A DNA stretch of 64,000 nt from Fimbriosthenelais zetlandica. Taxonomy: Eukaryota. Location of the stretch: assembly GCA_977030845.1 (NCBI GenBank), contig OZ365113.1, positions 11,284,001 through 11,348,000 of the forward strand, read 5' to 3'. The notes beneath the pieces are model-generated. The model ran no database searches and had not been told where the DNA came from. It was given only the letters and a program-made list of their open reading frames with translations. Of this stretch, positions 38 to 18,570 are shown piece after piece. How positions within the stretch are numbered: the stretch's first letter is position 1; each line of letters begins with the position of its first letter. The translations under genes were made by a program, and so were the position numbers.

Positions 38-3000
38 CTTTAAAAATTAAAAAGAAAAGAATGACCTCATGAAATTTATAGTAGAAGTACTGAGACTAGG
101 TTGTGAACCCGGCGAGTTTTAATTTAAATACTTTTATACTTTTTATTACTTGTAAAATGTGTAAATTCTAAGATTAATTATTGTACATATATATGTTGTA
201 TTATTAGTAAAATTTTTGTATCAGGACCGCCTGAAAAAACACCGAATGGTGGTAATGGTTTTTTGTAAAGTGTCCTTGTTTAAATAAAAAAAAAAAAAAA
301 AAATGCTATAGACGACTTACTTTTCATTGAGTCGCCATAATGTGTTATGTTTGACGGCCGCTCCGGCTGTGACGACCCCTGGTTGGATGAGGGCAGTAGG
401 TAGACTAGTAGCCACATAGATACCATCCCGGTTAACGCTATGTCCACCTCCACCACTCGCCTCCCCAGTTACCCTGCTATCTGATTTACTAGACACAGGG
501 GGGTTCTGAGACAGGAAACGGCTGGGAACTTGGTAGGAGACAGGGTAAGGACGCTTAATGGGCGTTATAGCATTGACAGGTGTTGTCTCCTTAGCCTAAT
601 AAAAGAAATACAAAGAAGGCTTTCATCAATCATACCATTCCTTTAATAAGTGTAACTGTTTTACTCAACATTAATTATATTTTTTTTTTAGTTAGAATTT
701 TTATAGAGCCATATTATGGGTGAATACCAGCTCACACTCTTGATTACTCAAGTTTTCGTATGATTTTCAGCTGGGGGCTCTTTCTAAGTGCATTGCTACA
801 TTGCCTTCTGTGCAATGGATATTTCTAGGTGCATGTGCTCTAGAACATATGTACAACAGAGCATTTAGAGCATTTATAAGAGCATTTAGAGGATTAATCA
901 CAATTTAATATATTTATGTTAATCCTAATAGTAAATTGGATAGTTTGTCCTCACCTGTACTGCTTGAACTTGGACAGGGTGGGTGTCTCCGACTTTGGCC
1001 CTCGCGGCCCGGGATATTGGTCCATATTTGGAAACCACTGTGTGCTCGAACGGAATAAATTCATCCTCATCTTCAGCTAGCCACAACCTGCAATCAATGG
1101 ATTCAAGAATAACTTATCGATATCAGATAGAAAAGGCCGCTGTGAAAATTATTTATTTTATTTAAATACTGTAATGAAAAATTATTTGATCAATTAGGTG
1201 AAGGAATTAGGGGAGATATATCACTGAGGGGTTGCAATTGATGAAATTGAAATTGAATTTTTCTGATTAACTAAAGCATATGTGCGGAGACTGTCAAATA
1301 ACTGAATTACAAACAATAAGAGCAGGTTGTGACCCCGGCGAGTTTTTAATTTAAATAATTTTTTTTTTTTTGATACTTGTGTTAATTGGCATAATTTGTA
1401 ACATTGGATTATTGTATACATTGTATTATGAGGAATTATTTAAAGTTAAATTTGTGTTGTATCAGGACCGCCTGAAAAGACGCCGAAAGGTGGAAATGGC
1501 TTTGTAAAAGTGTCCTTGAAATAATAATAAAAAAAAAAAAATGAATATTTGTGAAAGGTTGAGTGGATAATCCAAGGAAGAAAGGCTTACGGGTAATCTC
1601 TGAGTGAGAACTCAGGGCGGGCGCCGTCACTTGGTGGGATGTGGGTGTGTGAGTGAGAACAACCCGCATGTCCAACGGCCGGAGCCACGTTATACGACGA
1701 CATGGTGGTTGTGGATGAAGGAACTGACTGGATCAGCTTAGAAAAAAATATATACATAACAGGTAAGACATTTAATATACATAAAAATATACATAACAGG
1801 TAAGACATTTAATATACATAAAAATATACATAACAGGTAAGACATTTAATATACATGTACATAAAAATATACATAAGGGGCAAGGCATCAGACATTTAAT
1901 GACACATAACCAAAGATGGGAGTGATTTCATGAATGTACTGTTGCCTGGGACCCTTCTCGGTTAGCAGCAATGGGTCATATACATGCCCCTCACGCCGCA
2001 CCAGATGTAACGGGAGACATGATCAGCTTTTCATTTAAGAGAGTTTAAGCAGCAATAAACCATGGACCACCGTGTAAAGTCCTATAAAGAGAATGTTTAT
2101 ATCAGTTTATGTACTTACATAGACAGGTCTGGATGGTGTGTAATGACCCTGAGCTGTGGGGTTCGCCTCTAGCATTGAGTTGTACAGGGTTCGCTGTAAT
2201 TTCATATTACCCCTCAAGTTCGGGTTCGGTCGAGCAGGTCCATTTTCAACTGGAACAAAGAAGGCATTTAATACACTTTTAACAATAAATAGTTACTTTT
2301 TTTTCAATTCAATGACACCATTATTTAACTCCTATACAAGTAAGAAGTGAGCTGACCTCTGTGCATGGCCATGGTGGTGAGACTTGTAGCTAGGCTATCA
2401 GCCACACTCATGCTGATCTTGGTTGTTAGTGGGATCTGTAGTATAGCCGGAGCACTCTCAGGCTCGGTGATAGCCACATTTTTCTCTTCCCGTGCTGGTA
2501 GCTGTGACTCTTTGAGATGGGAGATGAGCTCTGTTTTACGCCGCTGAAGCTCCTGTAACTGTTGTGANNNNNNNNNNNNNNNNNNNNNNNNNNNNNNNNN
2601 NNNNNNNNNNNNNNNNNNNNNNNNNNNNNNNNNNNNNNNNNNNNNNNNNNNNNNNNNNNNNNNNNNNNNNNNNNNNNNNNNNNNNNNNNNNNNNNNNNNN
2701 NNNNAATGAATAGATGGATCAATGAATGAACGAACGGATGAATGAATGGATAGATGAATGGATGAATGAATGAATGAATGAATGAATGAACGAACGAACG
2801 GATGAATGAATGAATGAATGGCTATATGGGTCAATATCAAAATCAGGAACATGAGTAAATGGTCCATGACTTCCCCGTTTGTACAATGTCCAAAAATTAA
2901 ACCAAAATCATTAAAATTATCCTATAAAAACATGATATTTTAAAACAATAGAACGTAAGGACCATGTGTCACCTTTGTAGCAGCAGCTATGTTAGCAGAG

Positions 3001-6000
3001 AGATAGTAGTGAGAGTCACTGGTGGGGATGTTTACACGGGTGGTGCGGGTGTACGGGTTAGCAGGCATACACAGTACTGGATCCATGGAAGGACTGGTGG
3101 CAGACGGGAGAGGAGGAGACTCCACCGGGGGTGCTACAGGTGATCGGGGCTGCGTGGAGATGGTGGATATCGTGGTCATACCTGAGGTGAACAATGAAAA
3201 CAAGACGATTTAAATCAATGTTAATAGTCGCTTCTTGCTGTTGGTTTTAAAAGGTAATTTTTTTTTATTTTTTTTTAATATTTAGGATGTTTATACAGCG
3301 ACATAATCAATGAATGTATTCAAATGCTTTTAGAAATGAATCATTATGAATAAGATTGAATACAGAGATTTGCCGATGTAAGTATGGTTATATTGGTGAT
3401 TTATTGGTAAACTCACGGTCTTCAGGGTAGACTATATTGGGAGGTGGAGCTCGTTGAGAGACGGGTACAGCAGGCGGGGTGAAACTATCCTGTCTGGCCT
3501 GGGTCGGCGAGGTGTAGATAGTCTGCTGGGCTATAGCTTTCTTCGCTTGTACTGGCATGATGGAGGGTTTACCTACAGGCACAGTGACGGGAGCTTCTGA
3601 CGCGGGCAACACAGAGGATCTGTACAACAAGGATAGACAAATAAGCAATATTAAATTCAATATTAAATTTAATAAAGTAGAAAAGAATAGTCGGGATTTA
3701 ATGGAATCAAATTTAAACCTGAGAGGATAGGCATTATACTGAAACATCATTTCTTGTAAAAAGAAAAATATCTTTCGAGGGTAATCAAGAAATATTAGTA
3801 AATACCTGGTTATTGTAAGGGGAGGAGGGGTCTCCCGCTCCACGGGGGTCTGTTTCTGGCTTGCGGCACTAAAAGCTAAGAAATCAGCTTCAGCACTGGC
3901 TGACTCCACCACAAGTTGCTTAGGCTTCTTTATTCCAAACTTCTTGTTCTGATTCCGAAATCTGGGGGTTTAGAATCAGATGATTAGATCATTTCAAACA
4001 ATGGCTCCCTTTCAACCTTACACCTTATTCGAATTGTAAATTATATGGAAAATCTAACCCTGAAGCCAACCCCACAACGACCCAGCGTATTCGATTGCAA
4101 AACCATAAACTTGAGCCCCTTGAGCACAAATTCCTTTTAGGAAAAAGTGCTAAAGACAACAAATTTCTTTTAGCAATTTGCAGTTGGCGTTAGCAGATGT
4201 CAATTTGAATGAAACATTGCTAGTTGGATTTTTTGATATTTGTGTGATTTTGCGGTGGTTAGGTGTGATTTTTAGTTCGCAAAATTAGCGAATAACAGTC
4301 ATTTTCTCTTAGCAATGTAGCATTTTTATTTGCAAATTGCGACAGTGCGATCGGGTACAGCGAGCCCAGAGATACTAGTTATGAAACAGAAGAAGTCAGA
4401 TTGGAGTAACGCACCTTTCCATTTCTTCCTGGGAATGAGCAAAGGTACAGGTGGTGCCCCGGGGACATCGACCTTTCTGTAGGAGGTCACGACACATGGA
4501 CGTTTTAAACTTGTTATTCTGGTGAGCTATAGGTTCAGCCTTCCCCGAGTTACGAGCGTGGAAAAAATCAATGAGACCTTCAACCACGGTCTGAGCTGAA
4601 CGCATAATGGCGTCCAAGTTCTCCCACGATGGCGGCGGACTGTCTGTTGAAAATATATTATACACATTTAATTATATTTGTACCCCTATTTCTATTATCT
4701 GACCAGAAAAAATATTAATTACGTCTAATGTCAATAAGGGATTAAGTATACGATTCTTGCTTACCGGGGCTGGGGTCAATGTTAGCTAGTAGATCAAAAT
4801 GAGCTTTGAGTCGAGAAAGTCCCCCTGGGTCGTTGGTGCGCTGAAGGGCTAGCATAAGTTCTGAGACACTCTGTGAAAATGACTGTGGTGTTTGAAGCTG
4901 GAAATAAATTATATCCGATTTAAGATAAATAATTCACCTACCTATTTCAGATGATTAAAATCATAGAGGAAGTACGTACCTTATCAATGATAGACTGCAT
5001 ATAAGACTTGTGAGCCGCGTCCCCATATAAGAGTGACGACCACTGCTCGGGTGAGATACGGAGACCAGCCTCGGTGGCTATTTGTACAATCTGGGAATCA
5101 TGTTCGCGGCGCAAGGCTTCATAAGTCCTGAACTCGTCCTTCAACTGCATCAGTGATGACTCCTCCTCTCTTTTGGTGACCTAATAGATTAAAGGTTGAC
5201 AACTATTTCAGTCATCTTATTCTCCAGACCACATGATACAATTTATTTCATCCAAACATCCAAACCTGCCCATAATATACGTAGGCCACCAACCCCATGT
5301 AAAATCCCCTGGTGAAGACCGTATAATAAAGGTGGAAAGCTTAGATAAGTTCTGGGTCCTTCCCTTCCATATTCACGTATTTAGAAAACATTTCGTTAAC
5401 CACCGATTGGGAGCGGAGAAACCTAATATAGTTTACCTTGAAGCATGAAGCTCGGTACAGGAGTTGCACTACATGGCCCACGGCGGTTTTAGAAGCTTGC
5501 GTGTATTGTGATTCCAGTCGTTGAACGGCAAAGAGTACAAGTACTTTACGAGACAAGGCCGATCCATCCTCAAGAGCCAGTAATACCAACTTGAGGACCT
5601 CTTCTTGCATGGCTTTAAAATAAAATAATCAAGTTTTCTCCTGAATATTTATGCATCATATGTAGTAAATAAGTAATGTTACAAGAATAGTCTTTCATGG
5701 AAGACTTAATAAGCATTTTCAAAGTGTGTCAAACCTTTAAGATTCGGGGTTTTTTTGGGTTTTTTTTTATATAATCTATTTTTATTCTTGAGGTGTATAC
5801 AAATGTTTATGTAACAACTAGCGGTCTCGGGATGTTTTACAGTTATCGATCCCTTACCTGGGCCCAGGAACTGACAACCTCTGGCCCTCACTGCCGCCCA
5901 CAGATTGGCTGAGAGTTGTTGAGGGTTTTGGTGTTGCAGTATTAACTCTGTGACAGTCCTTTCTCCCAGAGATCGTGCGGCACGCATGGCTCGTGCCCGA

Positions 6001-6767
6001 CCCTCTTCCTCCAGTAGTTGACAGTTGACAAGGGTGACAAGCTTCCTCTGCATGGGTCGACTTAATACTGGACCAGCAGAGGAACTTGACTGGCTCCCGG
6101 AGGCTACAATAAAGACGTGATAAAAACATGAGGTTAAACTCAATTAATAAATAAATTGTATAAAACCATTGGATCCGACAGGAAAAGTGGATGGAATTGA
6201 GGAAAGGTGAAGTAAAACTTACGTTGGGAGGACATGGGTTTTAAATGGACAGCAAGGTTCTCGATACATCTTTTGGCTGAAGTGTAAAACTTGTAATTTT
6301 CGGCTAGACTGTCAGCAGCATGGTTGGTTTCTAACTGGTCAGGAATGGCAACACCCACTAGCTGCAGGAGGGCAAAGTTAACGGGCAGTTCATCGATCTC
6401 CCTGGAAATGACATTCTGATCAAATGGACATTTCTTCTGCTCAAACTTCTCAAGACACACCTAGAAAGACAAGAAAATAAAATGCAAGTCCGGGAAAAGT
6501 GAGGGAAGACAATTTCCTATCATATATTATTTACTGTCCCTCCCATTTATTAGGTTCCACCCAAAATATTTAGGCTAGATGTAGCCCATAATAGTATACC
6601 AGAATATAACATGGGAAATAATCAAATTACTGTACCTTGCAAATTGTGTGTCCACATCCTAAACTTATGGGTCGGTGATGAGTCTCTCCAAAGACATTGT
6701 AACAGATAGGACAAGAGAGGAACTCCGTCCATTGCGGGGCTGTCGTGGGCGGGCTTATTTTACTCAT
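1..6767 (-). CDS. RC3H1/RC3H2: Roquin (RING - ROQ/HEPN - CCCH zinc finger RNA-binding E3 ligase), multi-exon, 3' end beyond window start
   Basis: Hand-spliced GT-AG exons, phase-consistent except across the N gap: 6636-6767, 6223-6460, 5858-6103, 5437-5612, 4980-5180, 4765-4897, 4415-4643, 3806-3961, 3417-3619, 2973-3181, 2357-(>=2567, 5' part in N gap), 2119-2249, 1591-1736, 955-1087, 321-595, 1-37. Hallmarks: [57 protein letters not shown]...[19 protein letters not shown]...SKYGPISR. Confidence 0.97.
98..303 (+). mobile_element. 5'-truncated non-LTR retroelement 3' end with poly(A), antisense in a Roquin intron
   Basis: Aligns by eye with 1324-1541 (AGGTTGTGA.CCCGGCGAGTTTT...TCAGGACCGCCTGAAAA...GTGTCCTTG..A-tail). 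Confidence 0.7.
321..595 (-). CDS. RC3H1/RC3H2: Roquin coding exon 15
   Basis: Open frame [24 protein letters not shown]...HNTLWRLNE; TATTAG acceptor, AA|GTAAGT donor. Confidence 0.82.
686..831 (+). repeat. Dispersed repeat family copy 1 of 3
   Basis: TTTTAGTTAGAATTT.TATAG.GCC...CCAGCT.ACACTCTTGATTA.TCAAGTTTTCGTATGATTTTCAGCTGGGGGCTC also occurs at 58124-58274 (+) and partially at 9708-9797 (-). Confidence 0.85.
955..1087 (-). CDS. RC3H1/RC3H2: Roquin coding exon 14 (conserved C-terminal motif)
   Basis: [44 protein letters not shown] resembles the vertebrate DIIPF...SKWGAISR motif; TTGCAG acceptor, CAG|GTGAGG donor. Confidence 0.92.
1145..1541 (+). mobile_element. Longer copy of the same LINE-like 3' end with poly(A), antisense in a Roquin intron
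   Basis: Shared 3' 218 bp with 98-303. The extra 5' part reads as a decayed LINE ORF2 C-terminus ([10 protein letters not shown]...L.G...IF), recognised by eye only. Confidence 0.6.
1591..1736 (-). CDS. RC3H1/RC3H2: Roquin coding exon 13
   Basis: [25 protein letters not shown]...EFSLRDYP; TTTCTAAG acceptor, CC|GTAAG donor, phase 0 to 2. Confidence 0.8.
1746..1865. repeat. 37-bp tandem repeat, ~3 copies
   Basis: Unit ATACATAACAGGTAAGACATTTAATATACATAAAAAT; AGGTAAG at 1761, 1798, 1835. Confidence 0.95.
2119..2249 (-). CDS. RC3H1/RC3H2: Roquin coding exon 12
   Basis: [44 protein letters not shown]; TTCCAG acceptor, GTAAGT donor, phase 1 to 0. Confidence 0.82.
2357..2567 (-). CDS. RC3H1/RC3H2: Roquin coding exon 11 (5' part hidden in N gap)
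   Basis: [18 protein letters not shown] resembles the Roquin QLEELxxRKxEI coiled segment; donor AG|GTCAGC gives phase 1, matching the next exon. Confidence 0.85.
2568..2704. other. Assembly gap (137 N) next to an (ATGA)n microsatellite
   Basis: N run directly visible; (ATGA/ACGA)n at 2705-2820. Confidence 0.99.
2705..2820. repeat. (AATG)n-type microsatellite
   Basis: Imperfect ATGA/ATGG/ACGA tetramers. Confidence 0.95.
2973..3181 (-). CDS. RC3H1/RC3H2: Roquin coding exon 10 (Pro-rich region)
   Basis: [25 protein letters not shown]...[13 protein letters not shown]; CCTCAG acceptor, AAG|GTGACA donor. Confidence 0.86.
3417..3619 (-). CDS. RC3H1/RC3H2: Roquin coding exon 9 (Pro-rich region)
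   Basis: [18 protein letters not shown]...[12 protein letters not shown]; GTACAG acceptor, C|GTGAGT donor. Confidence 0.88.
3806..3961 (-). CDS. RC3H1/RC3H2: Roquin coding exon 8
   Basis: (R)[27 protein letters not shown]...PPLTITR; phase 2 in and out, canonical sites. Confidence 0.88.
4415..4643 (-). CDS. RC3H1/RC3H2: Roquin coding exon 7 (CCCH zinc finger)
   Basis: [32 protein letters not shown]. Confidence 0.96.
4765..4897 (-). CDS. RC3H1/RC3H2: Roquin coding exon 6 (HEPN-C)
   Basis: [44 protein letters not shown]; TTCCAG acceptor, G|GTAAG donor. Confidence 0.93.
4980..5180 (-). CDS. RC3H1/RC3H2: Roquin coding exon 5 (ROQ domain)
   Basis: [67 protein letters not shown]. Confidence 0.97.
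5437..5612 (-). CDS. RC3H1/RC3H2: Roquin coding exon 4 (ROQ domain)
   Basis: [34 protein letters not shown]...[19 protein letters not shown]. Confidence 0.97.
5858..6103 (-). CDS. RC3H1/RC3H2: Roquin coding exon 3 (ROQ domain)
   Basis: [69 protein letters not shown]; donor G|GTAAG. Confidence 0.97.
6223..6460 (-). CDS. RC3H1/RC3H2: Roquin coding exon 2 (RING C-half, HEPN-N)
   Basis: [15 protein letters not shown]...[12 protein letters not shown]...[14 protein letters not shown]; TTTCTAG acceptor, C|GTAAGT donor. Confidence 0.95.
6636..6767 (-). CDS. RC3H1/RC3H2: Roquin coding exon 1 (start codon, RING N-half)
   Basis: [44 protein letters not shown]; acceptor TTGCAG just upstream (exon starts 6777); donor AAG|GTACA; not in the ORF track (<60 aa). 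Confidence 0.95.
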
Positions 6768-9985: not shown

Positions 9986-10646
9986 ATGGACGAGGCAGGA
10001 GTAACCGTTGAAGTAGAGCCTCAAGAAGCCCCGACTTTAAAGCGGCCTGCAGATGACAACAGTGATGTAGATGCTCCTCCGTCCAAAGTTGCCAAGACTC
10101 CAAGCTCGTTCAAAAATGTCTTCAGACAACTGAGTCTCATGCGACCCGGTCTTCTCTTCGACTTGGAAGGTGAAGTGGCTTCTGACGGTGTGACGTCGTT
10201 GTATACTATGGTGGTTGACGTGGACGGTGTCAAATTCAGAGGGACCGGTCCAAGTAAGAGAAATGCCAAGGTCCTGGCAGGAGAGCAGGTACTAGCTCAC
10301 CTTGAGGCCCTTGGTGTGAAGCCAATACCAGAGAGTGAACGGCCGCCTAAACCTGAAAATACCAATAAAGGACAGTCCCAAAGTCAAGCTAGCACACTGA
10401 CTGAGGAACAAAAAGCTCAACAGATGGCGGGCAAAAACCCAGTCATGATGCTTCATGAGATAAGACCCAGTTTTGATTGTGAAATTGTGTCGGATGAACG
10501 GAAGGGGACCAGCCGGCGTGTGGAGATGGCCATCACAGTGGACGGGAAGAAGTTTACTGGAGGTGGACGCAGCAATAAGATTGCCAGGGCAAAGGCTGCC
10601 GTCTCCGCACTAGAATCACTCTTTTCATTGGAATTCACAGATTTTG
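9986..10646 (+). CDS. Gene A coding exon 1: bipartite NLS + dsRBD1 + dsRBD2 (ADAR2/ILF3-type dsRBDs)
   Basis: Acceptor TTTTCAG ending 9979, ATG at 9986. LKRPADD..PPSKVAK NLS; L..MRPGL...FRGTGPSKRNAK; GKNPVMMLHEIRP...VDGKKFTGGGRSNKIARAKAAVSALESLF. Two in-phase donors: G|GTGAAA (exon end 10646) or A|GTGAGA (exon end 10652). Confidence 0.92.
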
Positions 10647-10788
10647 GTGAAAGTGAGATATTTTGGAGTTATAAGTAATTCCTTTGGTTGAGTAGCGTCA
10701 TGGCATTATCTAGACATTGGGTATAATCATGCCCTTCGTCTCTTATGTATTCTATCTTTGTAGTTTTATCTTTTTGCTTCCGTTTCAG

Positions 10789-11921
10789 ATGAGATTCCAG
10801 TTTATCTTGGTGACGAAATGAATTGGAGGAAATTTACCAAAAAGGCGGAGAAATCTGCACCAAATCAGACAGCTGATGGTAAGCACCTAAAGAACGCTAT
10901 GATGCAGCTAAATGACATGTATAAAGGTCTTGAATTCAAAGTGAAAGAACGATCTGGACCCGACCACTGCCCTTTCTTCAAAGTGAATGTTGAAATAGAG
11001 GGACAAACATTTGAGGGGCAGGGTAGCACTAAAAAATCGGCCAAGTTAGATGCAGCAGAAAAAGCCTTGGTTGGTTTGTCGCTCACTGGTGCACTGGCTC
11101 AGAGGGCTTCCCAGAAAAGACAGCAAAAATTTGGCACCTCGGTCAAATGGAAAAACGGCGGTCAAGGTGGACAAGGTAAGAATGTACCACAACTGACCCA
11201 ATCTTTCCAGCCAGCCTCTAGTAATGGGTCTGGTGGGGCAGGGAAGCCATGGCAGTCGTCTGGGTCTGGTCGTGGTCGTGGATGGAATCGTCCATCGATG
11301 ATGGGGGATGGTCGTAATGCCAATCAGAATGGACAAATGGGCGGATCAGGGAGAGGTGGTACACAGAGAGGACGCGGTCGTGGGGGTTTGGGTCGTGGTC
11401 GTGGTCGTGGTGGAATGGGTCGTGGTAGCAGCTACAGTCAAGTCATGGAGGGTTACGGTTCTATGTCCGGCCAGCAGACATCCACCTCTGGCCGTGGTGC
11501 TTCCAAATTATTCACTGGTCGGGGTGTTGGTGATTTGAGCAATAACCTCTCCACTGATTTATCTACACTAGGTGGACTAACATCTGAGTCTAGTAGTCCC
11601 ATCACAGGAAGAGGCAGGGGCCAGACACATGCCCCGCTCTATGGTCGTACCTCCCAAGCTGGTCAAAGCTGGGACCAGCAAGCAACATGGAATCATACTT
11701 ACTCCTCCTACCAAGATCCTTATGATACCAACAGTCAGTGGAAATCGCAAGATTATGGTTATGACACTGGTTATGATGCCTCATACGACACTGGTTATGA
11801 TACCACTGCTTATGATACCACTGGTTATGATACAAACTATGATACTACTTATGACTCTACTTACACTGGTGGATATCAAGGTGAAAGCTCGGAGTGGAGC
11901 TCTGAATATTATCACTACTAG
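10789..11921 (+). CDS. Gene A coding exon 2: dsRBD3 + RGG/RG region + Tyr/Gly/Ser/Asp-rich low-complexity tail
   Basis: Acceptor TTTCAG ending 10788, phase 1. KNAMMQLNDMYKGLEFKVKERSGPDHCPFFKVNVEIEGQTFEGQGSTKKSAKLDAAEKAL is close to ADAR2 dsRBD1; GRGRGG repeats; YDTGY-type repeats; stop TAG at 11919-11921. Confidence 0.93.
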
Positions 11922-13210: not shown

Positions 13211-15328
13211 TCACAAATTGATTTTGATTGAGAGAGAGTGCCTCTCAGCATCTGGAGGACACTGAGCTCAAGGCATCAACGTTGGACTTTACTGTGAGGA
13301 ACGTAGATATTGTCTCCTTTGCATCTCATCCAAAGCTTCTCATGCTCCTATAGGCCGCAGAACGTGATAGACTATTATATTAGATGGTTATAAGTCGCCT
13401 TCTCACCACCCCCCCCCCCCCCCCCCACCTTTAACTTTTAAGTAGATATACCTGCACCTCTCTACATATCCATTCCTAAGCGTGTATTCCCAGGTATTAT
13501 GCCAAGTATTCTCAGACCTGTATCTATCAATCAGCCCGACCTGTCTTTTTTCCAAGTTGAGGACCAAATGTAGACATGACCTTGCACCTGATGACATCCT
13601 ATGATCAAGATAAGTGACTCAGGATCGCTTTGCAATTAACAAATTTAAATTGGACCAGTGGATTCCGTCGGGTTTCTTTCCTTCGATTCAGTCCTAGGAT
13701 TGGAATGATAATTGCTATTATCGTAATGATAGAGATATCAGATTGGAAAGTTGTATAAATCCTAATCTTGCAATTATATAATATATATTCTACGTATCAT
13801 TGACAGTCTTTGTACTGAGCTAATGCGTCCATGTATCTACCTATCTGACAGACTTCCCATCGTTTGGTCGAGAATAACATTTCTTCATGACCATGATGCA
13901 TATTTCCCTTTACAGCGACTTATACCGATCTTAACTTGCAATATAGCGCTACACAGGAGAGATCGTGGAAAGCAAAACATCTAATTATTGAAATGGATAT
14001 TGTCACCACTGTTGAAATTTCTCGATCTTGAATGTATAAGATATGTATACCAGAACTGATTAGGAAGTGCTGATCATTATTTTGTTGATTAATGACCATT
14101 GAAGAATTTTGGAAAAAGCACCTCGGCTCAGTATGATCTCAAATTTTGCTACCGTGGATTTCTTTTGTTTCAATAAAATCCACAATGATGTACACATGTA
14201 TGACCAGGTGTATGAAGTCACCGAAGAGAAATACACTAGATGCCGGCGACTATAGATGGTTCTAAAAATATAAACTATAACTCGATGGGTACAGCAGGCT
14301 GCTAGCCGAGGGAAGACATATATTCTCATAGAATTATAACAATCGTAATGGCCTCTGTATTTGTGATCAGACATGTTATGTACATATTTGTAAAAGTTCA
14401 AAATTAGATAGGTTGGAATTCGTCGCAAAAAAGTCCTTCGGGGAGTGGTGTTTCTGGACAATAATTGGGGTTTGTGTTTAAAGCAACTTTATCATCTATT
14501 GCCTAATGATTGCAAGTGAAAACGCCCTTTTTTCTAAAGTATAATTTGTATCTGTATATATGATAATGGTCTAAGGGGGTATAGGCTACATTTAATTTGT
14601 CCTTGCACGCTTGGTTGACTTTGGGCAAAGTTAACCCAAAAACCTGTTAGTGACCAAGTGGACAACTGATTGCATTTCAGAACATAATGTATGTTAATCT
14701 CTGGTCACCTCAAAATGAAGGTGAAAAACACATTATGAACAAACTCCCCAAAGATTTATTATGCATGGTATTCTATTAGTGTGTGTAATAGTATTCATTT
14801 CTACAGTAACTCTAGGCCTATACATGTTATTGGACCCGTGTTCACTTGTAAGTCGTAAAGAATTCATGGCAATTTGGTAGAAGAAAATGTTATTAAAAGG
14901 AATCCTTGTTTTAGCACCATTAAATGTCTTTTGTAAAAAATAAACCGCCTTTGCTTTATTATGTCAATGGGGTTATGGTATAAGAATATTTTACCATTAT
15001 TAATTTTGATTCTGCTCACCACACTCCCCCCACCCCCTCCAAACATACCCATGCATGCCGATTTGTTTATATTTAAGTTTTTTTCCAAGTGTTTTTTGAT
15101 AAAAGGTTCATTATGATGAATTAGTTTTCTCAATGACGAATGTTTGGTAAAATAATAATTTTCCATCTTTTTAATTCCTTATTTTCACAATATTATCGTG
15201 CTCTTGAATATTTTGTCCAATCTGAATCTGGTAGTATTTTATTGAATACCATTACTTATAATTACTTACACATATTATATCATTTCTCAAACACAGGGAA
15301 TGGAGAAGAAATAGGAAAAGTGGAGAAC

Positions 15329-16760
15329 ATGATCGTGGCAATGAAGTCAGAAGTAGTCCAGGATGATAATATAAAGATGGATAGACTAAGTGATAAACGC
15401 TCTGCTGACATGAGAGATATACAAGATGAAATGAAACGACATGAGACAAAGGCCCGCCCGGGAGACCAGCCCCGTATAAAGATTAAAGAAACTAGTACGC
15501 CTAAAGTTCTTAAGAGAAAGATTGAGGTGAAATTTGAAGATTCACTAACTCCTAACGAAGCTACAACACTAGATAAACAGGAAACCAAGAGGAGGAAAAA
15601 CAACGGAGATGAATTGAAGAAGCAAGTCAATTCGAAAGAAGCAAGTGATGTTGAAACCAGATCCCTGACCAAAAAAAGTATGATTTTGAAAACCTATGAG
15701 AAATATAATCTCAGGGAAAGAAAGTATAAATGTACTACAGTTGATGCAGGGAGAGATGATTTCCTCAACTTTGACAATATTTTAACGGATCAGAAGGAAA
15801 CAAAGAGTACGAAAGAGAACAAACATGAAATGAAGATACACCGTAAACATGATAAAACTGGCAGTGGAAGTGGCCAACCCCCTGAAGTAGTGAAGACGCC
15901 AACTCGTGTTGAAACCAAATCCAAAGTCCCAAATCCACAGAGCAAAGATGCCATGAAGATAGAATGTAAAGAGGCGAGAAAGGACAGTGGGGGAAACCAG
16001 CCTCTTGAAAAAAGGAAAGAAACGAGGTTGCCTCGTCCTAATGTTGACACCAAAACTAAAGTTGCTGATGAGTATGAGCGTAAGTTTGAGTTGGATCATG
16101 ACTATGATTCCCTTACTCCTGTCAAAGTTATTATAATTGATGACTCGGAGACAGAGAGTAGTGATGGAGAGGTTCCAAATGAGTCTGATGTGATGGTCAT
16201 CAGTAGTGACGAGTCAGAGTCAGAGAGTAGTGATGGAATGTATGGAGAGGTTCCACGTGAGTCCAATGGTATAATAATCAGTAGTGACGAAGATGAGCTT
16301 GAAGAGGAGAGATGGCTGACCAACAGCTGTACAAAACCGGTGAAAAAGAGAATCCGGTACCTTTATCAGTTCAAGCCTGACCTCCAACATGTTCAAGCAG
16401 AGAGAGTGGGTTCCGTCTACCAAATACAGTCCACCATTAATGTTCACAGGTATGTTGGTAAAGGTGCAACAAAACTTATGGCCAAATTATCTTTAGCCTC
16501 AAGATTTTGGTACTCGCTTTGCGAGGATTGCCCTATTACCCGGCACCCAATGACAGCTTTGACTCAACTGATGGGTGGTAGTAGATATGGCGAAGAGTCA
16601 CTGAATATTGATGCTGAAAACAGAGGGTGGTATGCTACTGAAGTAATCATACCGGGACATGGAAAATTTACTGCCAACGGTCCAACCCAAAAATCTGCAC
16701 GTTTCCTCGCAGCGGCAAAAGCAATCGAAACAATTTTTGGGTTGAAGTGTGAAACCAGTA
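15329..16760 (+). CDS. Gene B coding exon 1: charged disordered N-terminus, 3 SIM-like motifs, 2 divergent dsRBDs
   Basis: Acceptor ...AAACACAG ending 15296; first in-frame ATG at 15329 (alternative 15341). dsRBD-like KKRIRYLYQFKPDL...YVGKGATKLMAK and RHPMTAL...KFTANGPTQKSARFLAAAKAIETIFGL; donor A|GTGAGT at 16760/16761 (phase 1). Upstream coding exons are not excluded. Confidence 0.82.
16121..16309 (+). repeat. Tandemly duplicated ~66-75-bp unit encoding hydrophobic-core + Ser/acidic (SIM-like) motifs
   Basis: GAGAGTAGTGATGGA...GAGGTTCCA...ATCAGTAGTGACGA recurs; protein VKVIIIDDSETESSD / DVMVISSDESESESSD / GIIISSDEDELEEE. Confidence 0.85.
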
Positions 16761-16972
16761 GTGAGTATTTGATTTATTTATTAGGGCCCTATGATACATT
16801 AAATTAATCTGATCGATTTAATAGCTCCATGTCCCAGGCATTAAGATACTGTGTTAATATAAATGTGTTCGATATAAATCGGGTGCCTACTGTTTATTTC
16901 TCATAGCAATTGGACTACATTGTATTTGATAAAATATAGCTAAAATACAAATTTAAATTATACTTTTCACAG

Positions 16973-18570
16973 ATAGACTGCCGGTGATCAGTCATAGGCC
17001 TAATGGCTTGATGTCCTCTTCCGAGATGAAGATGCTCCTTTCCAAGAAGCCGCTCAATTCCAAGAAGAAGCCGCTCATTTCCAAGAAGAAGCCGCTCAAT
17101 TCCAAGAAGAAGCCGCTCACTTCCAAGAAGAAGCCTCTCACTTCCGAGAAGAAGCCTCTCAATTCCCAGAAGAAGCCTCTCAATTCCCAGAAGAAGCCGC
17201 TCACTTCCGAGAAGAATCCGCTCACTTCCGAGAAGAAGACGCTCACTTCCGAGAAGAAGACGCTCACTTCCGAGAAGAAGCCTCTTAATTCCCAGAAGAA
17301 GCCGCTCACTTCCGAGAAGAAGCCGCTCACTTCCGAGAAGAAGCCGCTCACTTCCGAGAAGAAGCCGCTCACTTCCGAGAAGAAGCCGCTCACTTCCGAG
17401 AAGAAGCAACAAAAGGCAAAGACGTGTAACAACACAGGCCTATCTACAATGCGACAATCCTCTCCCGTAGCAACTACAATGTCGGTGACTGCTACCTTGT
17501 CGACACAGGATAGAGCACTTTGTGACCAACCGAGTAACGCAAAGAAAAGTTTAGGTGGCACTCACACCAGAAAGCTGGCGGACACTTCTCTGTCTCAACC
17601 ATCCTCCCATTCCAAGCTTCCCCGCGACGTGCCAAAACATGTTACCCCAGCTGGTAATTCGAAGAATCCGAAGGACATTAAAGTTAAAGTAGAACCTTCA
17701 ACTTCCCAGGCTGGCCCTAGCAAGAACCATTCCAAGCTTTCCCGCGACGTGCCAAATCATGTTACCCCAGCTGGTAATTCGAAGAATCCGAAGGACATTA
17801 AAGTTAAAGTAGAACCTTCAACTTCCCAGGCTGGCCCTAGCAAGAACCATTCCAAGCTTTCCCGCGACGTGCCAAATCATGTTACCCCAGCTGGTAATTC
17901 GAAGAATCCGAAGGACATTAAAGTTAAAGTAGAACCTTCAACTTCCCAGGCTGGCCTTAGCAAGAACCATTCCAAGATTTCCCGCGACGTGCCAAATCAT
18001 GTTACCCCAGCTGGTAATTCGAAGAATCCGAAGGACATTAAAGTTAAAGTAGAACCTTCAACTTCCCAGGCTGGCCTTAGCAAGAACCATTCCAAGATTT
18101 CCCGCGACGTGCCAAATCATGTTACCCCAGCTGGTAATTCGAAGAATCCGAAGGACATTAAAGTTAAAGTAGAACCTTCAACTTCCCAGCCTCAACCATC
18201 CTCCCATTCTAAGCGTTCCCATGACGTGTCAGAGGGGAGAGCTCCACGTAGTACTACTACTAATACTACTAAGAGCACCGCATATATAAAGGTAGAGCCT
18301 TCATCCTCCCAGCCTCGTCCTAGCAAGGACTCGTCTTCAAATCTCTTTGAAGAACCTAAACCAGGACTGTCTCGCAGCAGACAGTACGAGATAGACAGGA
18401 AACCTATTAAAAGTCTTTTATGTTTGGAATCCGATTCTTCTCGCCCAATGTCCACAAGATCCATCCAGAACCAGGGTATTCACCCGATTGATTATGGTGG
18501 ATATTTCGGCAATTATCCTGCACACAATGGTAGAAGTGACAAAGATTTTACACGGAACTATCGTGAATAA
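16973..18570 (+). CDS. Gene B coding exon 2: Lys-rich heptad array + 40-aa SUMO-site repeats
   Basis: Acceptor TTTTCACAG ending 16972, phase 1, continuing into the 528-aa ORF (NRLPVISHRP...); stop TAA at 18568-18570. Confidence 0.82.
17041..17409 (+). repeat. 21-bp coding minisatellite, ~17.5 copies (S[K/E/Q]KKPL[T/N])
   Basis: Unit TCC[A/G/C]AGAAGAAGCCGCTCACT directly visible. Confidence 0.98.
17608..18327 (+). repeat. 120-bp coding tandem repeat, 5 near-identical copies + 1 degenerate copy
   Basis: Units start at 17608, 17728, 17848, 17968, 18088, with the degenerate copy at 18205; 40-aa unit HSKLSRDVPNHVTPAGNSKNPKDIKVKVEPSTSQAGPSKN. Confidence 0.98.

What the first reader, a model, noticed from the sequence alone, without database searches (positions are those of the whole stretch)
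15329..18570. dsRBD protein carrying both a poly-SIM array and a poly-SUMO-acceptor array (candidate self-assembling SUMO-dependent dsRNA scaffold)
Seen: the spliced ~1009-aa gene B product has three tandem motifs (VKVIIIDDSETESSD, DVMVISSDESESE, GIIISSDEDELEEE) directly before two dsRBDs. It also has at least ten psi-K-x-E sites: MKSE, VKFE, MKIE, LKCE, five VKVEP and one IKVEP. Both arrays were amplified by tandem duplication. Established: a hydrophobic core followed by Ser/acidic residues is the CK2-regulated phospho-SIM of PML/PIAS/Daxx; psi-K-x-E is the Ubc9 SUMO acceptor consensus; multivalent SUMO-SIM pairs build PML-type bodies; SUMO is required for piRNA-guided transcriptional silencing in Drosophila. 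Inference: one polypeptide combining dsRNA recognition with both halves of a SUMO-SIM network could polymerise into nuclear bodies or recruit silencing machinery to dsRNA or transposon transcripts. I know of no described dsRBD family with this architecture.
Basis: partly seen in the sequence, partly recalled or inferred. Interest (0 to 1): 0.88.

Follow-up and report, generated by a model that had tools for sequence, protein, structure and literature searches.

The report
Orphan dsRNA-binding-type protein with SUMO-like motifs
An animal gene found only in this genome encodes a mostly floppy protein with two worn-looking double-stranded-RNA-binding modules, next to clusters of short motifs that look like SUMO-binding and SUMO-attachment sites; the layout is real and unusual, but nothing shows that it is expressed or works with SUMO.

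Summary
A two-exon gene (15329-16760 + 16973-18570, + strand) joins in frame through a GTGAGT...CAG intron to give 1009 aa. It has three acidic, Ser-rich SIM-like motifs (aa 265-327), plus a fourth candidate at aa 959. Two dsRBD-type modules follow (aa ~339-470). There are ten psi-K-x-E sites against 1.8 expected.

Five of those sites lie in a 99%-identical 120-bp repeat. After collapsing the repeats, 6 remain against 1.2-1.7 expected (P 0.001-0.006).

The dsRBDs are supported by weak sequence hits, a collinear profile match to the neighbouring gene and a structure model that I seeded with dsRBD sequences. They miss Pfam's cut-off and lack two of the three canonical RNA-contact motifs.

Gene B is a fast-evolving tandem paralogue of the neighbouring 3x-dsRBD gene A. 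It has the same phase-1 intron after dsRBD2 and sits in the slot that holds an ordinary gene-A copy in a related species. That copy, gene A and its orthologues carry no SIM-like motif and 0-1 psi-K-x-E site.

No homologue of gene B turned up in three large protein searches, and no sequencing run was listed. The SUMO reading is plausible at motif level only; the self-assembling dsRNA scaffold is speculation. The scan had already noted this stretch (s1-200454) and gene A (s1-200445). Interest is moderate.

The parts
15329..16760 (+). Gene B exon 1 (aa 1-477 plus the first base of codon 478). It carries a K/E/T-rich disordered N-terminus, the SIM-like cluster, an NLS-like basic patch and two dsRBD-type modules.
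   Evidence: The ORF is open from 15140, and 15329 is the first in-frame ATG after a possible acceptor at 15295-96. On a charge-hydropathy plot only aa 338-471 fall on the folded side.
16121..16309 (+). Cluster of three phosphoSIM-like motifs: VKVIIIDDSETESSD at 16121-16165, DVMVISSDESESESSD at 16187-16234 and GIIISSDEDELEEE at 16268-16309. Net charge is -13 over aa 251-300, and there are six S/T-x-x-D/E (CK2-type) sites.
   Evidence: The consensus [V/I/L]-[V/I/L]-x-[V/I/L] with acidic or phospho-Ser flanks is taken from PMC9371903.
16334..16360 (+). Basic patch KPVKKRIRY directly before dsRBD1; NLS-like (inference).
   Evidence: KKR at aa 339. Other basic clusters lie at aa 62, 87 and 228.
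16343..16519 (+). dsRBD-type module 1 (aa ~339-397). Its region-3 motif reads TKLMAK, helix alpha1 has Q where Glu is canonical, and the beta1-beta2 loop is short and lacks GPxH.
16547..16738 (+). dsRBD-type module 2 (aa ~407-470). Its region-3 motif reads TQKSAR (gene A's dsRBD2 reads SNKIAR), helix alpha1 has Q, and GPxH is absent.
   Evidence: Pfam DSRM_2 E 0.084, 13.8 bits against a cut-off of 27. Also.
16761..16972 (+). Predicted 212-nt phase-1 intron (GTGAGT...ttttcacAG). If it were retained, the ORF would stop at 16805-16807 and give a 492-aa protein with the SIMs and dsRBDs only.
   Evidence: Gene A has a phase-1 intron at the same place after dsRBD2. Exon 2 begins (D/N)EIPVY in gene A and NRLPVI in gene B.
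16973..18570 (+). Gene B exon 2 (aa 478-1009): disordered, with repeats; stop codon at 18568-18570.
   Evidence: In the part outside the 21-bp array, only the + frame is open for hundreds of codons.
17044..17407 (+). 21-bp x 17.3 coding repeat (KKPLTSE heptads; net charge about +32).
17607..18189 (+). 120-bp x 4.9 coding repeat, 99% identical. Each 40-aa unit carries PKDIKVKVEP, which holds a forward VKVE site and an inverted DIKV site.
18286..18300 (+). Stand-alone IKVEP site (aa 916-920), outside the repeat.
18415..18441 (+). Fourth SIM-like candidate, LLCLESDSS (aa 959-967).
9986..11921 (+). Gene A, the parent-type paralogue: three canonical dsRBDs, an RGG region and a Tyr-rich tail. Exon 1 ends at 10646 or 10652, and exon 2 starts at 10789.
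   Evidence: Pfam dsrm E 1.9e-12 and 4.7e-11. Orthologues are 75-80% identical.
14824..14860 (+). Conserved single-copy non-coding block upstream of gene B, ending in a GTAAGT donor-like site at 14848. It may be the end of a 5' non-coding exon (inference).
   Evidence: It matches L002 5840-5878, upstream of the A' copy.

Best explanation
Shown:
- Gene B is an intact two-exon gene.
- It is a fast-evolving tandem paralogue of the neighbouring 3x-dsRBD gene A.
- It keeps two dsRBD-type modules of the ILF3/STRBP/ADAR kind.
- It has no match to gene A's dsRBD3/RGG/Tyr-rich part.
- It carries a disordered K/E-rich N-terminus, an acidic cluster of three SIM-like motifs, a basic heptad array and a 40-aa repeat with psi-K-x-E sites. 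None of these occurs in gene A or the A' copy.

Inferred:
- The protein is nuclear, because it has several basic NLS-like patches.
- The acidic SIM-like motifs, probably after CK2-type phosphorylation, bind SUMO or SUMO chains.
- The VKVEP/IKVEP lysines are Ubc9 targets.
- The protein therefore enters, and may help cross-link, SUMO-dependent nuclear assemblies. The degenerate dsRBD pair would bring in structured RNA or another dsRBD protein.

I rate SUMO binding or modification at about even odds. Self-polymerisation on dsRNA is much less likely.
For: Gene model and motif counts.

dsRBD identity:
- An exhaustive phmmer search of 1.84 billion proteins gave three hits. Two are dsRBD proteins: a DZF + 6x dsrm protein at E 4e-5 and an ADAR-like protein at E 6e-4.
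- phmmer against PDB chains hits the ADAR2 tandem dsRBMs at E 8e-4, with both modules in register.
- hhalign against the gene-A family profile is collinear (E 5e-5, probability 67%).
- All named language-model neighbours are dsrm clusters.
- The AF2 model (pLDDT 73) shows alpha-beta-beta-beta-alpha twice. Its best structural matches are the NF90 tandem dsRBDs (5dv7, E 8e-7) and STRBP/ILF3.

Paralogy: gene A has the same phase-1 intron after dsRBD2, and two single-copy conserved blocks are shared with L002, placing gene B in the slot of the A' copy.

SIM reading: motifs 1 and 2 fit published core consensus forms, and all three have Ser/Asp/Glu flanks like the PML VVVI-SSS..S phosphoSIM (PMC9371903; PMC4276917). 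The core codons differ between units, yet all stay aliphatic (VIII, VMVI, III).

The motif arrays are specific to gene B among its relatives. Only the dsRBD segment falls on the folded side of a charge-hydropathy plot.
Against: - No RNA or DNA run was listed, so expression and the splice are unproven.
- No orthologue was found, so conservation of the motifs cannot be shown. The positional counterpart in a relative lacks them.
- Pfam's dsrm model gives no hit, and DSRM_2 is sub-threshold.
- The confident AF2 model rests on an alignment that I seeded with dsRBD proteins. The single-sequence model is poor (pLDDT 42.5).
- Two of the three RNA-contact regions listed in PMC11309768 are missing in both modules.
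- All four differences among the 120-bp units change the amino acid. The changes among the 21-bp units are about 5 replacement to 2 silent. Neither pattern shows purifying selection (sequence read).
- Short motifs such as SIM and psi-K-x-E have many false positives.
Confidence: 0.42

Rival explanations
1. Charge-block disordered protein with no SUMO involvement. The acidic Ser/Asp/Glu cluster and the lysine-rich repeats on either side of the dsRBDs act by electrostatics. The acidic block could mask the basic regions or the RNA-binding face within the molecule, or the blocks could drive charge-based self-association. On this reading the SIM-like and psi-K-x-E matches are by-products of expanding short repeats in a K/E/S-rich sequence.
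For: Net charge is -13 for aa 251-300 against about +32 for aa 501-650. Both arrays arose by tandem duplication. Repeat variants show no excess of silent changes (sequence). The motifs are absent from all relatives.
Against: psi-K-x-E is still enriched after collapsing the repeats (6 against 1.2-1.7). Three diverged units each keep a run of 3-4 aliphatic residues inside an otherwise acidic stretch, which charge alone does not require. A stand-alone IKVEP lies outside the repeat.
Confidence: 0.28
2. A gene that is not functional as modelled. It could be a young duplicate drifting towards loss or not expressed. The two long ORFs might not be joined, giving only the 492-aa exon-1 product. The repeat copy numbers might be assembly artefacts.
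For: No homologue was found anywhere and no run was listed. The dsRBDs are degenerate. The 99%-identical repeats are hard to assemble. No + strand AATAAA lies within 2.7 kb after the stop.
Against: 1009 codons are open across a consensus intron. Outside the repeats only one frame is open. The intron position and phase are inherited from gene A. A conserved upstream block with a donor-like site suggests a kept 5' exon or promoter.
Confidence: 0.17
3. A protein-binding (type-B-like) dsRBD adaptor. The degenerate dsRBD pair no longer binds dsRNA. Instead it pairs with the gene A product or another dsRBD protein, so gene B would link that partner to SUMO-marked sites or act as its regulator.
For: Glu is replaced by Gln in alpha1 and GPxH is lost in both modules (criteria from PMC11309768). 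Gene B is a tandem paralogue of a canonical dsRBD gene.
Against: Lysines and Arg of region 3 are partly kept (K..AK and QK.AR). Some working dsRBDs tolerate such changes. There is no interaction data.
Confidence: 0.13

Closest known systems
ILF3/NF90 and STRBP (SPNR) tandem dsRBDs
   Same: They are the best structural matches: 5dv7 at E 8e-7, ILF3 DRBM2 at TM 0.8 by target, and STRBP/ILF3 at the top of Swiss-Prot. Both have a basic patch just before dsRBD1. Gene B's neighbour and parent-type gene A also has an RGG region, as ILF3 does (ILF3's RGG is from my own knowledge).
   Different: Neither gene B nor gene A has a DZF domain. The linker between the two modules is only about 9 residues. The RNA-contact motifs are degenerate. 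SIM-like and psi-K-x-E arrays are not a feature I know of in ILF3/STRBP.
ADAR-type tandem dsRBMs
   Same: These give the only direct sequence hits: ADAR-like P0003 at E 6e-4 and ADAR2 (2l3j) at E 8e-4, with both modules in register.
   Different: Gene B has no deaminase domain, and identity is about 24-26%.
PhosphoSIMs of PML, Daxx and PIAS1
   Same: An aliphatic core is followed directly by Ser/Asp/Glu with CK2-type sites. The PML core is VVVI followed by SSS..S (PMC9371903; PMC4276917). Gene B's motif 2 reads VMVI followed by SSDESESE.
   Different: This is a motif-level resemblance only. Gene B has no RBCC/TRIM, SP-RING or Daxx domains, and binding is untested.
Multi-SIM readers of SUMO chains (RNF4-type) and engineered polySUMO/polySIM condensates
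   Same: Several SIM-like motifs are spaced about 20-25 residues apart in a disordered stretch. Engineered polySUMO/polySIM pairs form PML-body-like condensates (PMC6601508 and PMC10859935).
   Different: Gene B has no RING or other catalytic domain. The acceptor sites are only predicted, whereas the engineered systems use fused SUMO domains.
SUMO-modified dsRBD proteins (TARBP2 K52, DHX9 K120)
   Same: These are dsRBD proteins regulated by SUMO conjugation (PMC4673853 and PMC11255299).
   Different: They have single acceptor sites and no SIM cluster of their own. In the TARBP2 paper the SIMs discussed may lie in a partner protein; I saw only the abstract and term counts, so this point is from my own knowledge.

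Membership tests
dsRBD (Pfam dsrm clan) | alpha-beta-beta-beta-alpha fold | tested here: met
   The AF2 model (pLDDT 73) has the topology twice, and its Foldseek hits are dsRBD proteins. Caveat: the alignment was seeded with dsRBD proteins, and the single-sequence model is poor (pLDDT 42.5), although its elements run in a compatible order.
dsRBD (Pfam dsrm clan) | Profile score above the curated cut-off | tested here: not met
   PF00035 gives no hit. PF24995 DSRM_2 scores 13.8 bits against a cut-off of 27 (E 0.084) for module 2 only. Weaker support comes from phmmer (E 4e-5 to 8e-4) and hhalign (E 5e-5).
dsRBD (RNA-binding, type A) | Region 1: conserved Glu in helix alpha1 | tested here: not met
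   Both modules have Gln at that position (LYQ and LTQ) in the alignments. The criterion is from PMC11309768.
dsRBD (RNA-binding, type A) | Region 2: GPxH in the beta1-beta2 loop | tested here: not met
   Module 1 has GS and a loop four residues shorter than in ADAR2. Module 2 has ENRG with no His.
dsRBD (RNA-binding, type A) | Region 3: KKxAK at the start of helix alpha2 | tested here: inconclusive
   The motifs read TKLMAK (K1 and K5 kept) and TQKSAR (K2 kept, K5 to R). K58, A61 and K62 are invariant in alignment A1.
ILF3/STRBP/ZFR (DZF) family | DZF domain N-terminal to the dsRBDs | tested here: not met
   Gene B and gene A have no DZF_N or DZF_C hit. The distant hit P0002 has both.
SUMO-interacting motif (phosphoSIM type) | Aliphatic core fitting a published SIM consensus form | tested here: met
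   VIII fits [V/I/L]-[V/I/L]-x-[V/I/L] as given in PMC9371903. VMVI fits only the V/I-x-V/I-V/I form, which I know from memory. The third motif has only three aliphatic residues (III).
SUMO-interacting motif (phosphoSIM type) | Acidic or phosphorylatable flank, in a disordered region | tested here: met
   Seven to ten D/E/S residues occur in the next 11 positions, with six S/T-x-x-D/E sites. The stretch is coil in the single-sequence model and on the disordered side of the charge-hydropathy plot.
SUMO-interacting motif (phosphoSIM type) | Binds SUMO | not testable with these tools
   This needs a pull-down or calorimetry with the species' SUMO. No complex prediction tool was available.
SUMO substrate (consensus type) | psi-K-x-E in an accessible region | tested here: met
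   There are ten sites, or six after collapsing the repeats. Nine lie in regions on the disordered side of the plot, and LKCE lies at the end of dsRBD2.
SUMO substrate (consensus type) | Conjugation by Ubc9 | not testable with these tools
   This needs in vitro or in-cell SUMOylation assays.
SUMO-targeted ubiquitin ligases (RNF4 type) | RING domain beside the SIM cluster | tested here: not met
   Neither exon product has a RING or any other catalytic domain in Pfam at E up to 10.

The most novel reading that the evidence does not exclude
A natural single polypeptide combines a multivalent SIM array, a multivalent SUMO-acceptor array and an RNA-binding dsRBD pair. Once SUMOylated it would cross-link with itself and form RNA-loaded, SUMO-dependent nuclear bodies, as a PML-independent invertebrate counterpart of the engineered polySUMO/polySIM condensates. 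Valency would be tunable by repeat copy number.
Probability: 0.12. Interest if true: 0.8.

Novelty: new variant of a known kind. Interest (0 to 1): 0.42.

Why it matters
If the SUMO reading holds, this would be a natural case in which RNA recognition, SUMO binding and SUMO acceptance sit in one chain. The number of interaction sites would be set by recent repeat expansion. That would make a useful model for how SUMO-SIM valency builds nuclear bodies, and for how a duplicated RNA-binding gene takes on a new role.

As it stands, it documents rapid divergence of a tandem dsRBD duplicate. The folded modules are barely recognisable, new disordered regions were built from minisatellites, and the sister copy in a related species stayed conventional. 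Without expression, conservation or biochemical data it remains a well-defined hypothesis rather than a discovery.

Tried and rejected
- RNA and DNA read support: the look-up of sequencing runs twice (exon 1 with kind rna; dsRBD part with kind any). None was listed, so read laying could not be used.
- Exact-sequence look-ups of the 555-aa ORF and of gene A exon 2: not on record, so this genome is not in that collection.
- Homologue searches with exon 1 and with exon 2 outside the heptads: nothing at E <= 0.01.
- Exhaustive phmmer with the dsRBD part gave three hits. The best, P0001 (E 1.9e-9), is a bacterial CshA/Big_9/cadherin-like adhesin matched in 11 short stretches to query residues 92-127. 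I reject it as a repeat-summed false positive.
- tblastn and blastn of gene B against the loci of two related species: no gene B-like sequence, only two short conserved non-coding blocks.
- Direct BLASTP of gene B against the A' copy: not significant. I built no tree because gene B is too diverged to place.
- phmmer of the SIM stretch against PDB chains: no hit, as expected for short biased motifs.
- Single-sequence AF2 of SIMs plus dsRBDs: low confidence.
- Pfam on the N-terminus and exon 2: only sub-threshold coiled-coil or low-complexity matches.
- Rfam and tRNA scans: nothing.
- The bacterial promoter/terminator scan is not meaningful for an animal gene.
- The ORFs on the opposite strand across the 21-bp array (165 and 189 aa) are open only because the repeat is open in several frames. 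I reject them as genes.
- Taxon: I could not name the organism. Earlier notes from this scan call it an animal.
Full report
**1. What is in the sequence**

The stretch holds two long + strand ORFs, 15140-16807 and 16984-18570. A GTGAGT donor starts at 16761, and a ttttcacAG acceptor ends at 16972. Exon 1 ends in phase 1, and joining 16760 to 16973 gives one 1009-aa reading frame from the ATG at 15329.

- If the intron were retained, the frame would stop at 16805-16807 and give a 492-aa product.
- Outside the 21-bp array only this frame is open for hundreds of codons, so both exons look coding.
- The opposite-strand ORFs over 16915-17561 exist only because the 21-bp repeat is open in several frames.
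- No RNA family or tRNA lies in or near the gene.

**2. The motifs**

There are three SIM-like motifs: VKVIIIDDSETESSD (aa 265-279), DVMVISSDESESESSD (287-302) and GIIISSDEDELEEE (314-327). Each has 7-10 Asp/Glu/Ser residues in the 11 positions after the aliphatic run. The stretch holds six S/T-x-x-D/E sites. A fourth candidate, LLCLESDSS, lies at aa 959.

- At DNA level, units 1 and 2 are an evident duplication (GAG.CAGAGAGTAGTGATGGA...GAGGTTCCA..TGAG). Unit 3 is a partial copy.
- The core codons differ between units (GTT ATT ATA ATT, GTG ATG GTC ATC, ATA ATA ATC). All still encode aliphatic residues, which is a small hint of constraint.

There are ten [VILMF]KxE sites, against 1.78 +/- 1.33 in shuffles.

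- Five sites lie in a 120-bp x 4.9 repeat that is 99% identical (17607-18189).
- After collapsing both repeat arrays, 6 sites remain against 1.2-1.7 expected (P 0.001-0.006).
- Each 40-aa unit reads PKDIKVKVEP, which holds a forward VKVE site and an inverted DIKV site.
- A 21-bp x 17.3 array (17044-17407) encodes KKPLTSE heptads with a net charge of about +32.

**3. Are there two dsRBDs?**

Pfam alone says no. PF00035 gives nothing, and DSRM_2 reaches 13.8 bits against a cut-off of 27. Other evidence agrees that they are there:

- An exhaustive phmmer search of 1.84 billion representatives returned three proteins. One is a false positive, a bacterial adhesin matched in 11 short stretches. The other two are a DZF + 6x dsrm protein (E 4e-5) and an ADAR-like protein (E 6e-4). 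BLASTP against the ADAR-like protein aligns both modules across 161 residues.
- phmmer against PDB chains finds the ADAR2 tandem dsRBMs (2l3j, E 8e-4) with both modules in register.
- A profile of the gene-A family's dsRBD1-2 aligns collinearly with gene B (hhalign E 5e-5, probability 67%).
- All named language-model neighbours are dsrm clusters, but scores are at most 0.88, so this is a lead only.
- An AF2 model built on a small alignment that I seeded with those dsRBD proteins reaches pLDDT 73. It shows alpha-beta-beta-beta-alpha twice.
- Foldseek puts the NF90 tandem dsRBDs first (5dv7, E 8e-7). ILF3 DRBM2 matches at TM 0.8 by target, and STRBP/ILF3 lead in Swiss-Prot.

That model is partly circular. 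The single-sequence model is poor (pLDDT 42.5), though its helices and strands run in a compatible order and the SIM stretch is coil. On a charge-hydropathy plot only aa 338-471 fall on the folded side.

I accept two dsRBD-type folds, but they are degenerate. The three RNA-contact regions are Glu in alpha1, GPxH and KKxAK (PMC11309768). Both modules have Gln in place of Glu, both lack GPxH, and region 3 reads TKLMAK and TQKSAR. dsRNA binding is therefore uncertain.

**4. Origin**

Gene A (9986-11921) has three canonical dsRBDs, an RGG region and a Tyr-rich tail.

- Its intron after dsRBD2 is phase 1, like gene B's.
- Exon 2 starts (D/N)EIPVY in gene A and NRLPVI in gene B.
- Gene A's dsRBD2 shares the unusual x-K-x-A-R form of region 3 (SNKIAR against TQKSAR).

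Two related species carry gene A orthologues that are 75-80% identical.

- In one (L002-L004), gene A is followed about 4.5 kb downstream by a second conventional copy, A'. A' is 50% identical to gene A and has three dsRBDs, an RGG region and a Tyr-rich tail.
- Two single-copy non-coding blocks (window 13650-13677 and 14824-14860) are conserved and collinear with L002, between gene A and A'. Gene B therefore occupies the slot of A'.
- The other relative (L001) has nothing comparable within 10 kb downstream.
- Gene A, its orthologues and A' have 0-1 psi-K-x-E sites and no SIM-like motif.

Gene B is thus either the strongly diverged counterpart of A' or a separate duplicate at the same place. 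It has no match to the dsRBD3/RGG/Tyr-rich part of gene A, and its disordered regions have no counterpart in gene A or A'.

No homologue of either exon was found in the large protein collections. This genome itself is not in them, so absence is weak evidence.

**5. How it most likely works**

Shown: the gene structure, the fold type, the motif arrays and their origin by duplication.

Inferred, in falling order of confidence:
- The protein is nuclear, from basic patches at aa 62, 87, 228 and 336-344.
- The acidic SIM-like cluster binds SUMO, helped by CK2-type phosphorylation, as in PML, Daxx and PIAS1 (PMC9371903, PMC4276917).
- The VKVEP/IKVEP lysines are SUMO acceptors.
- Both together let the protein join or cross-link SUMO-dependent nuclear assemblies, as engineered polySUMO/polySIM pairs do (PMC6601508, PMC10859935).
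- The dsRBD pair brings in structured RNA or a dsRBD partner.

The main rival is a charge-block protein. Its acidic block (-13) and basic block (+32) would act by electrostatics, and the motif matches would be by-products of repeat growth. The differences among repeat units are mostly amino-acid-changing, which does not argue for purifying selection on the repeats. A third possibility is that the gene is not expressed or not joined as modelled.

**6. Comparison with what is known**

dsRBD proteins that are SUMOylated are described: TARBP2 K52 and DHX9 K120. Two full-text searches found no dsRBD protein with its own SIM cluster. That library is incomplete.

Gene B is not a member of the DZF family, because it has no DZF domain. 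It is not a SUMO-targeted ligase, because it has no RING. It is not PML-like in domain terms. It is best filed as a new variant of a dsRBD protein.

**7. Verdict**

Interest is moderate. The scan had already noted this stretch and its neighbour (s1-200454, s1-200445).

Noticed in passing
window 9986-11921 (+): Gene A has three canonical dsRBDs, an RGG region and a Tyr/Asp-rich tail (YDTGYDASYDT...), with no DZF domain. Its orthologues are 75-80% identical in two other assemblies. One relative has two tandem conventional copies, A and A'.
   Followed up: partly
window 13650-13677 and 14824-14860; L002 4099-4132 and 5840-5878: Two short conserved, single-copy, collinear non-coding blocks lie between gene A and the next gene. 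Both contain TTGGACCnGTG. The second ends in a donor-like GTAAGT (GTATGT in L002), so it may be the end of a 5' non-coding exon that splices to a possible acceptor at 15295-96.
   Followed up: partly
window 16118-16132 (aa 264-268): PVKVI overlaps the first SIM-like motif and fits the PxVxL-type pentapeptide that HP1 chromoshadow domains bind. The motif definition is from memory and was not tested.
   Followed up: no
window 5706-6143 (-): An ORF on the minus strand upstream carries the start of a Roquin-type ROQ domain (Pfam E 1.2e-5, 26.1 bits against a cut-off of 27). It is probably one exon of a Roquin-like gene.
   Followed up: no
window 13404-13430: A run of about 20 C residues (broken by one A) lies in the A-B intergenic region.
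   Followed up: no
window ~2500-2640 (within ORF 2325-2867, minus strand): The window holds 137 N. The run seen is a gap or masked stretch inside an ORF with a repeated SFIHS-type translation.
   Followed up: no
P0002: A 2012-aa protein in the public library joins DZF_N/DZF_C to six dsrm domains and a long repetitive tail. This is an unusually large ILF3/ZFR-type architecture.
   Followed up: no
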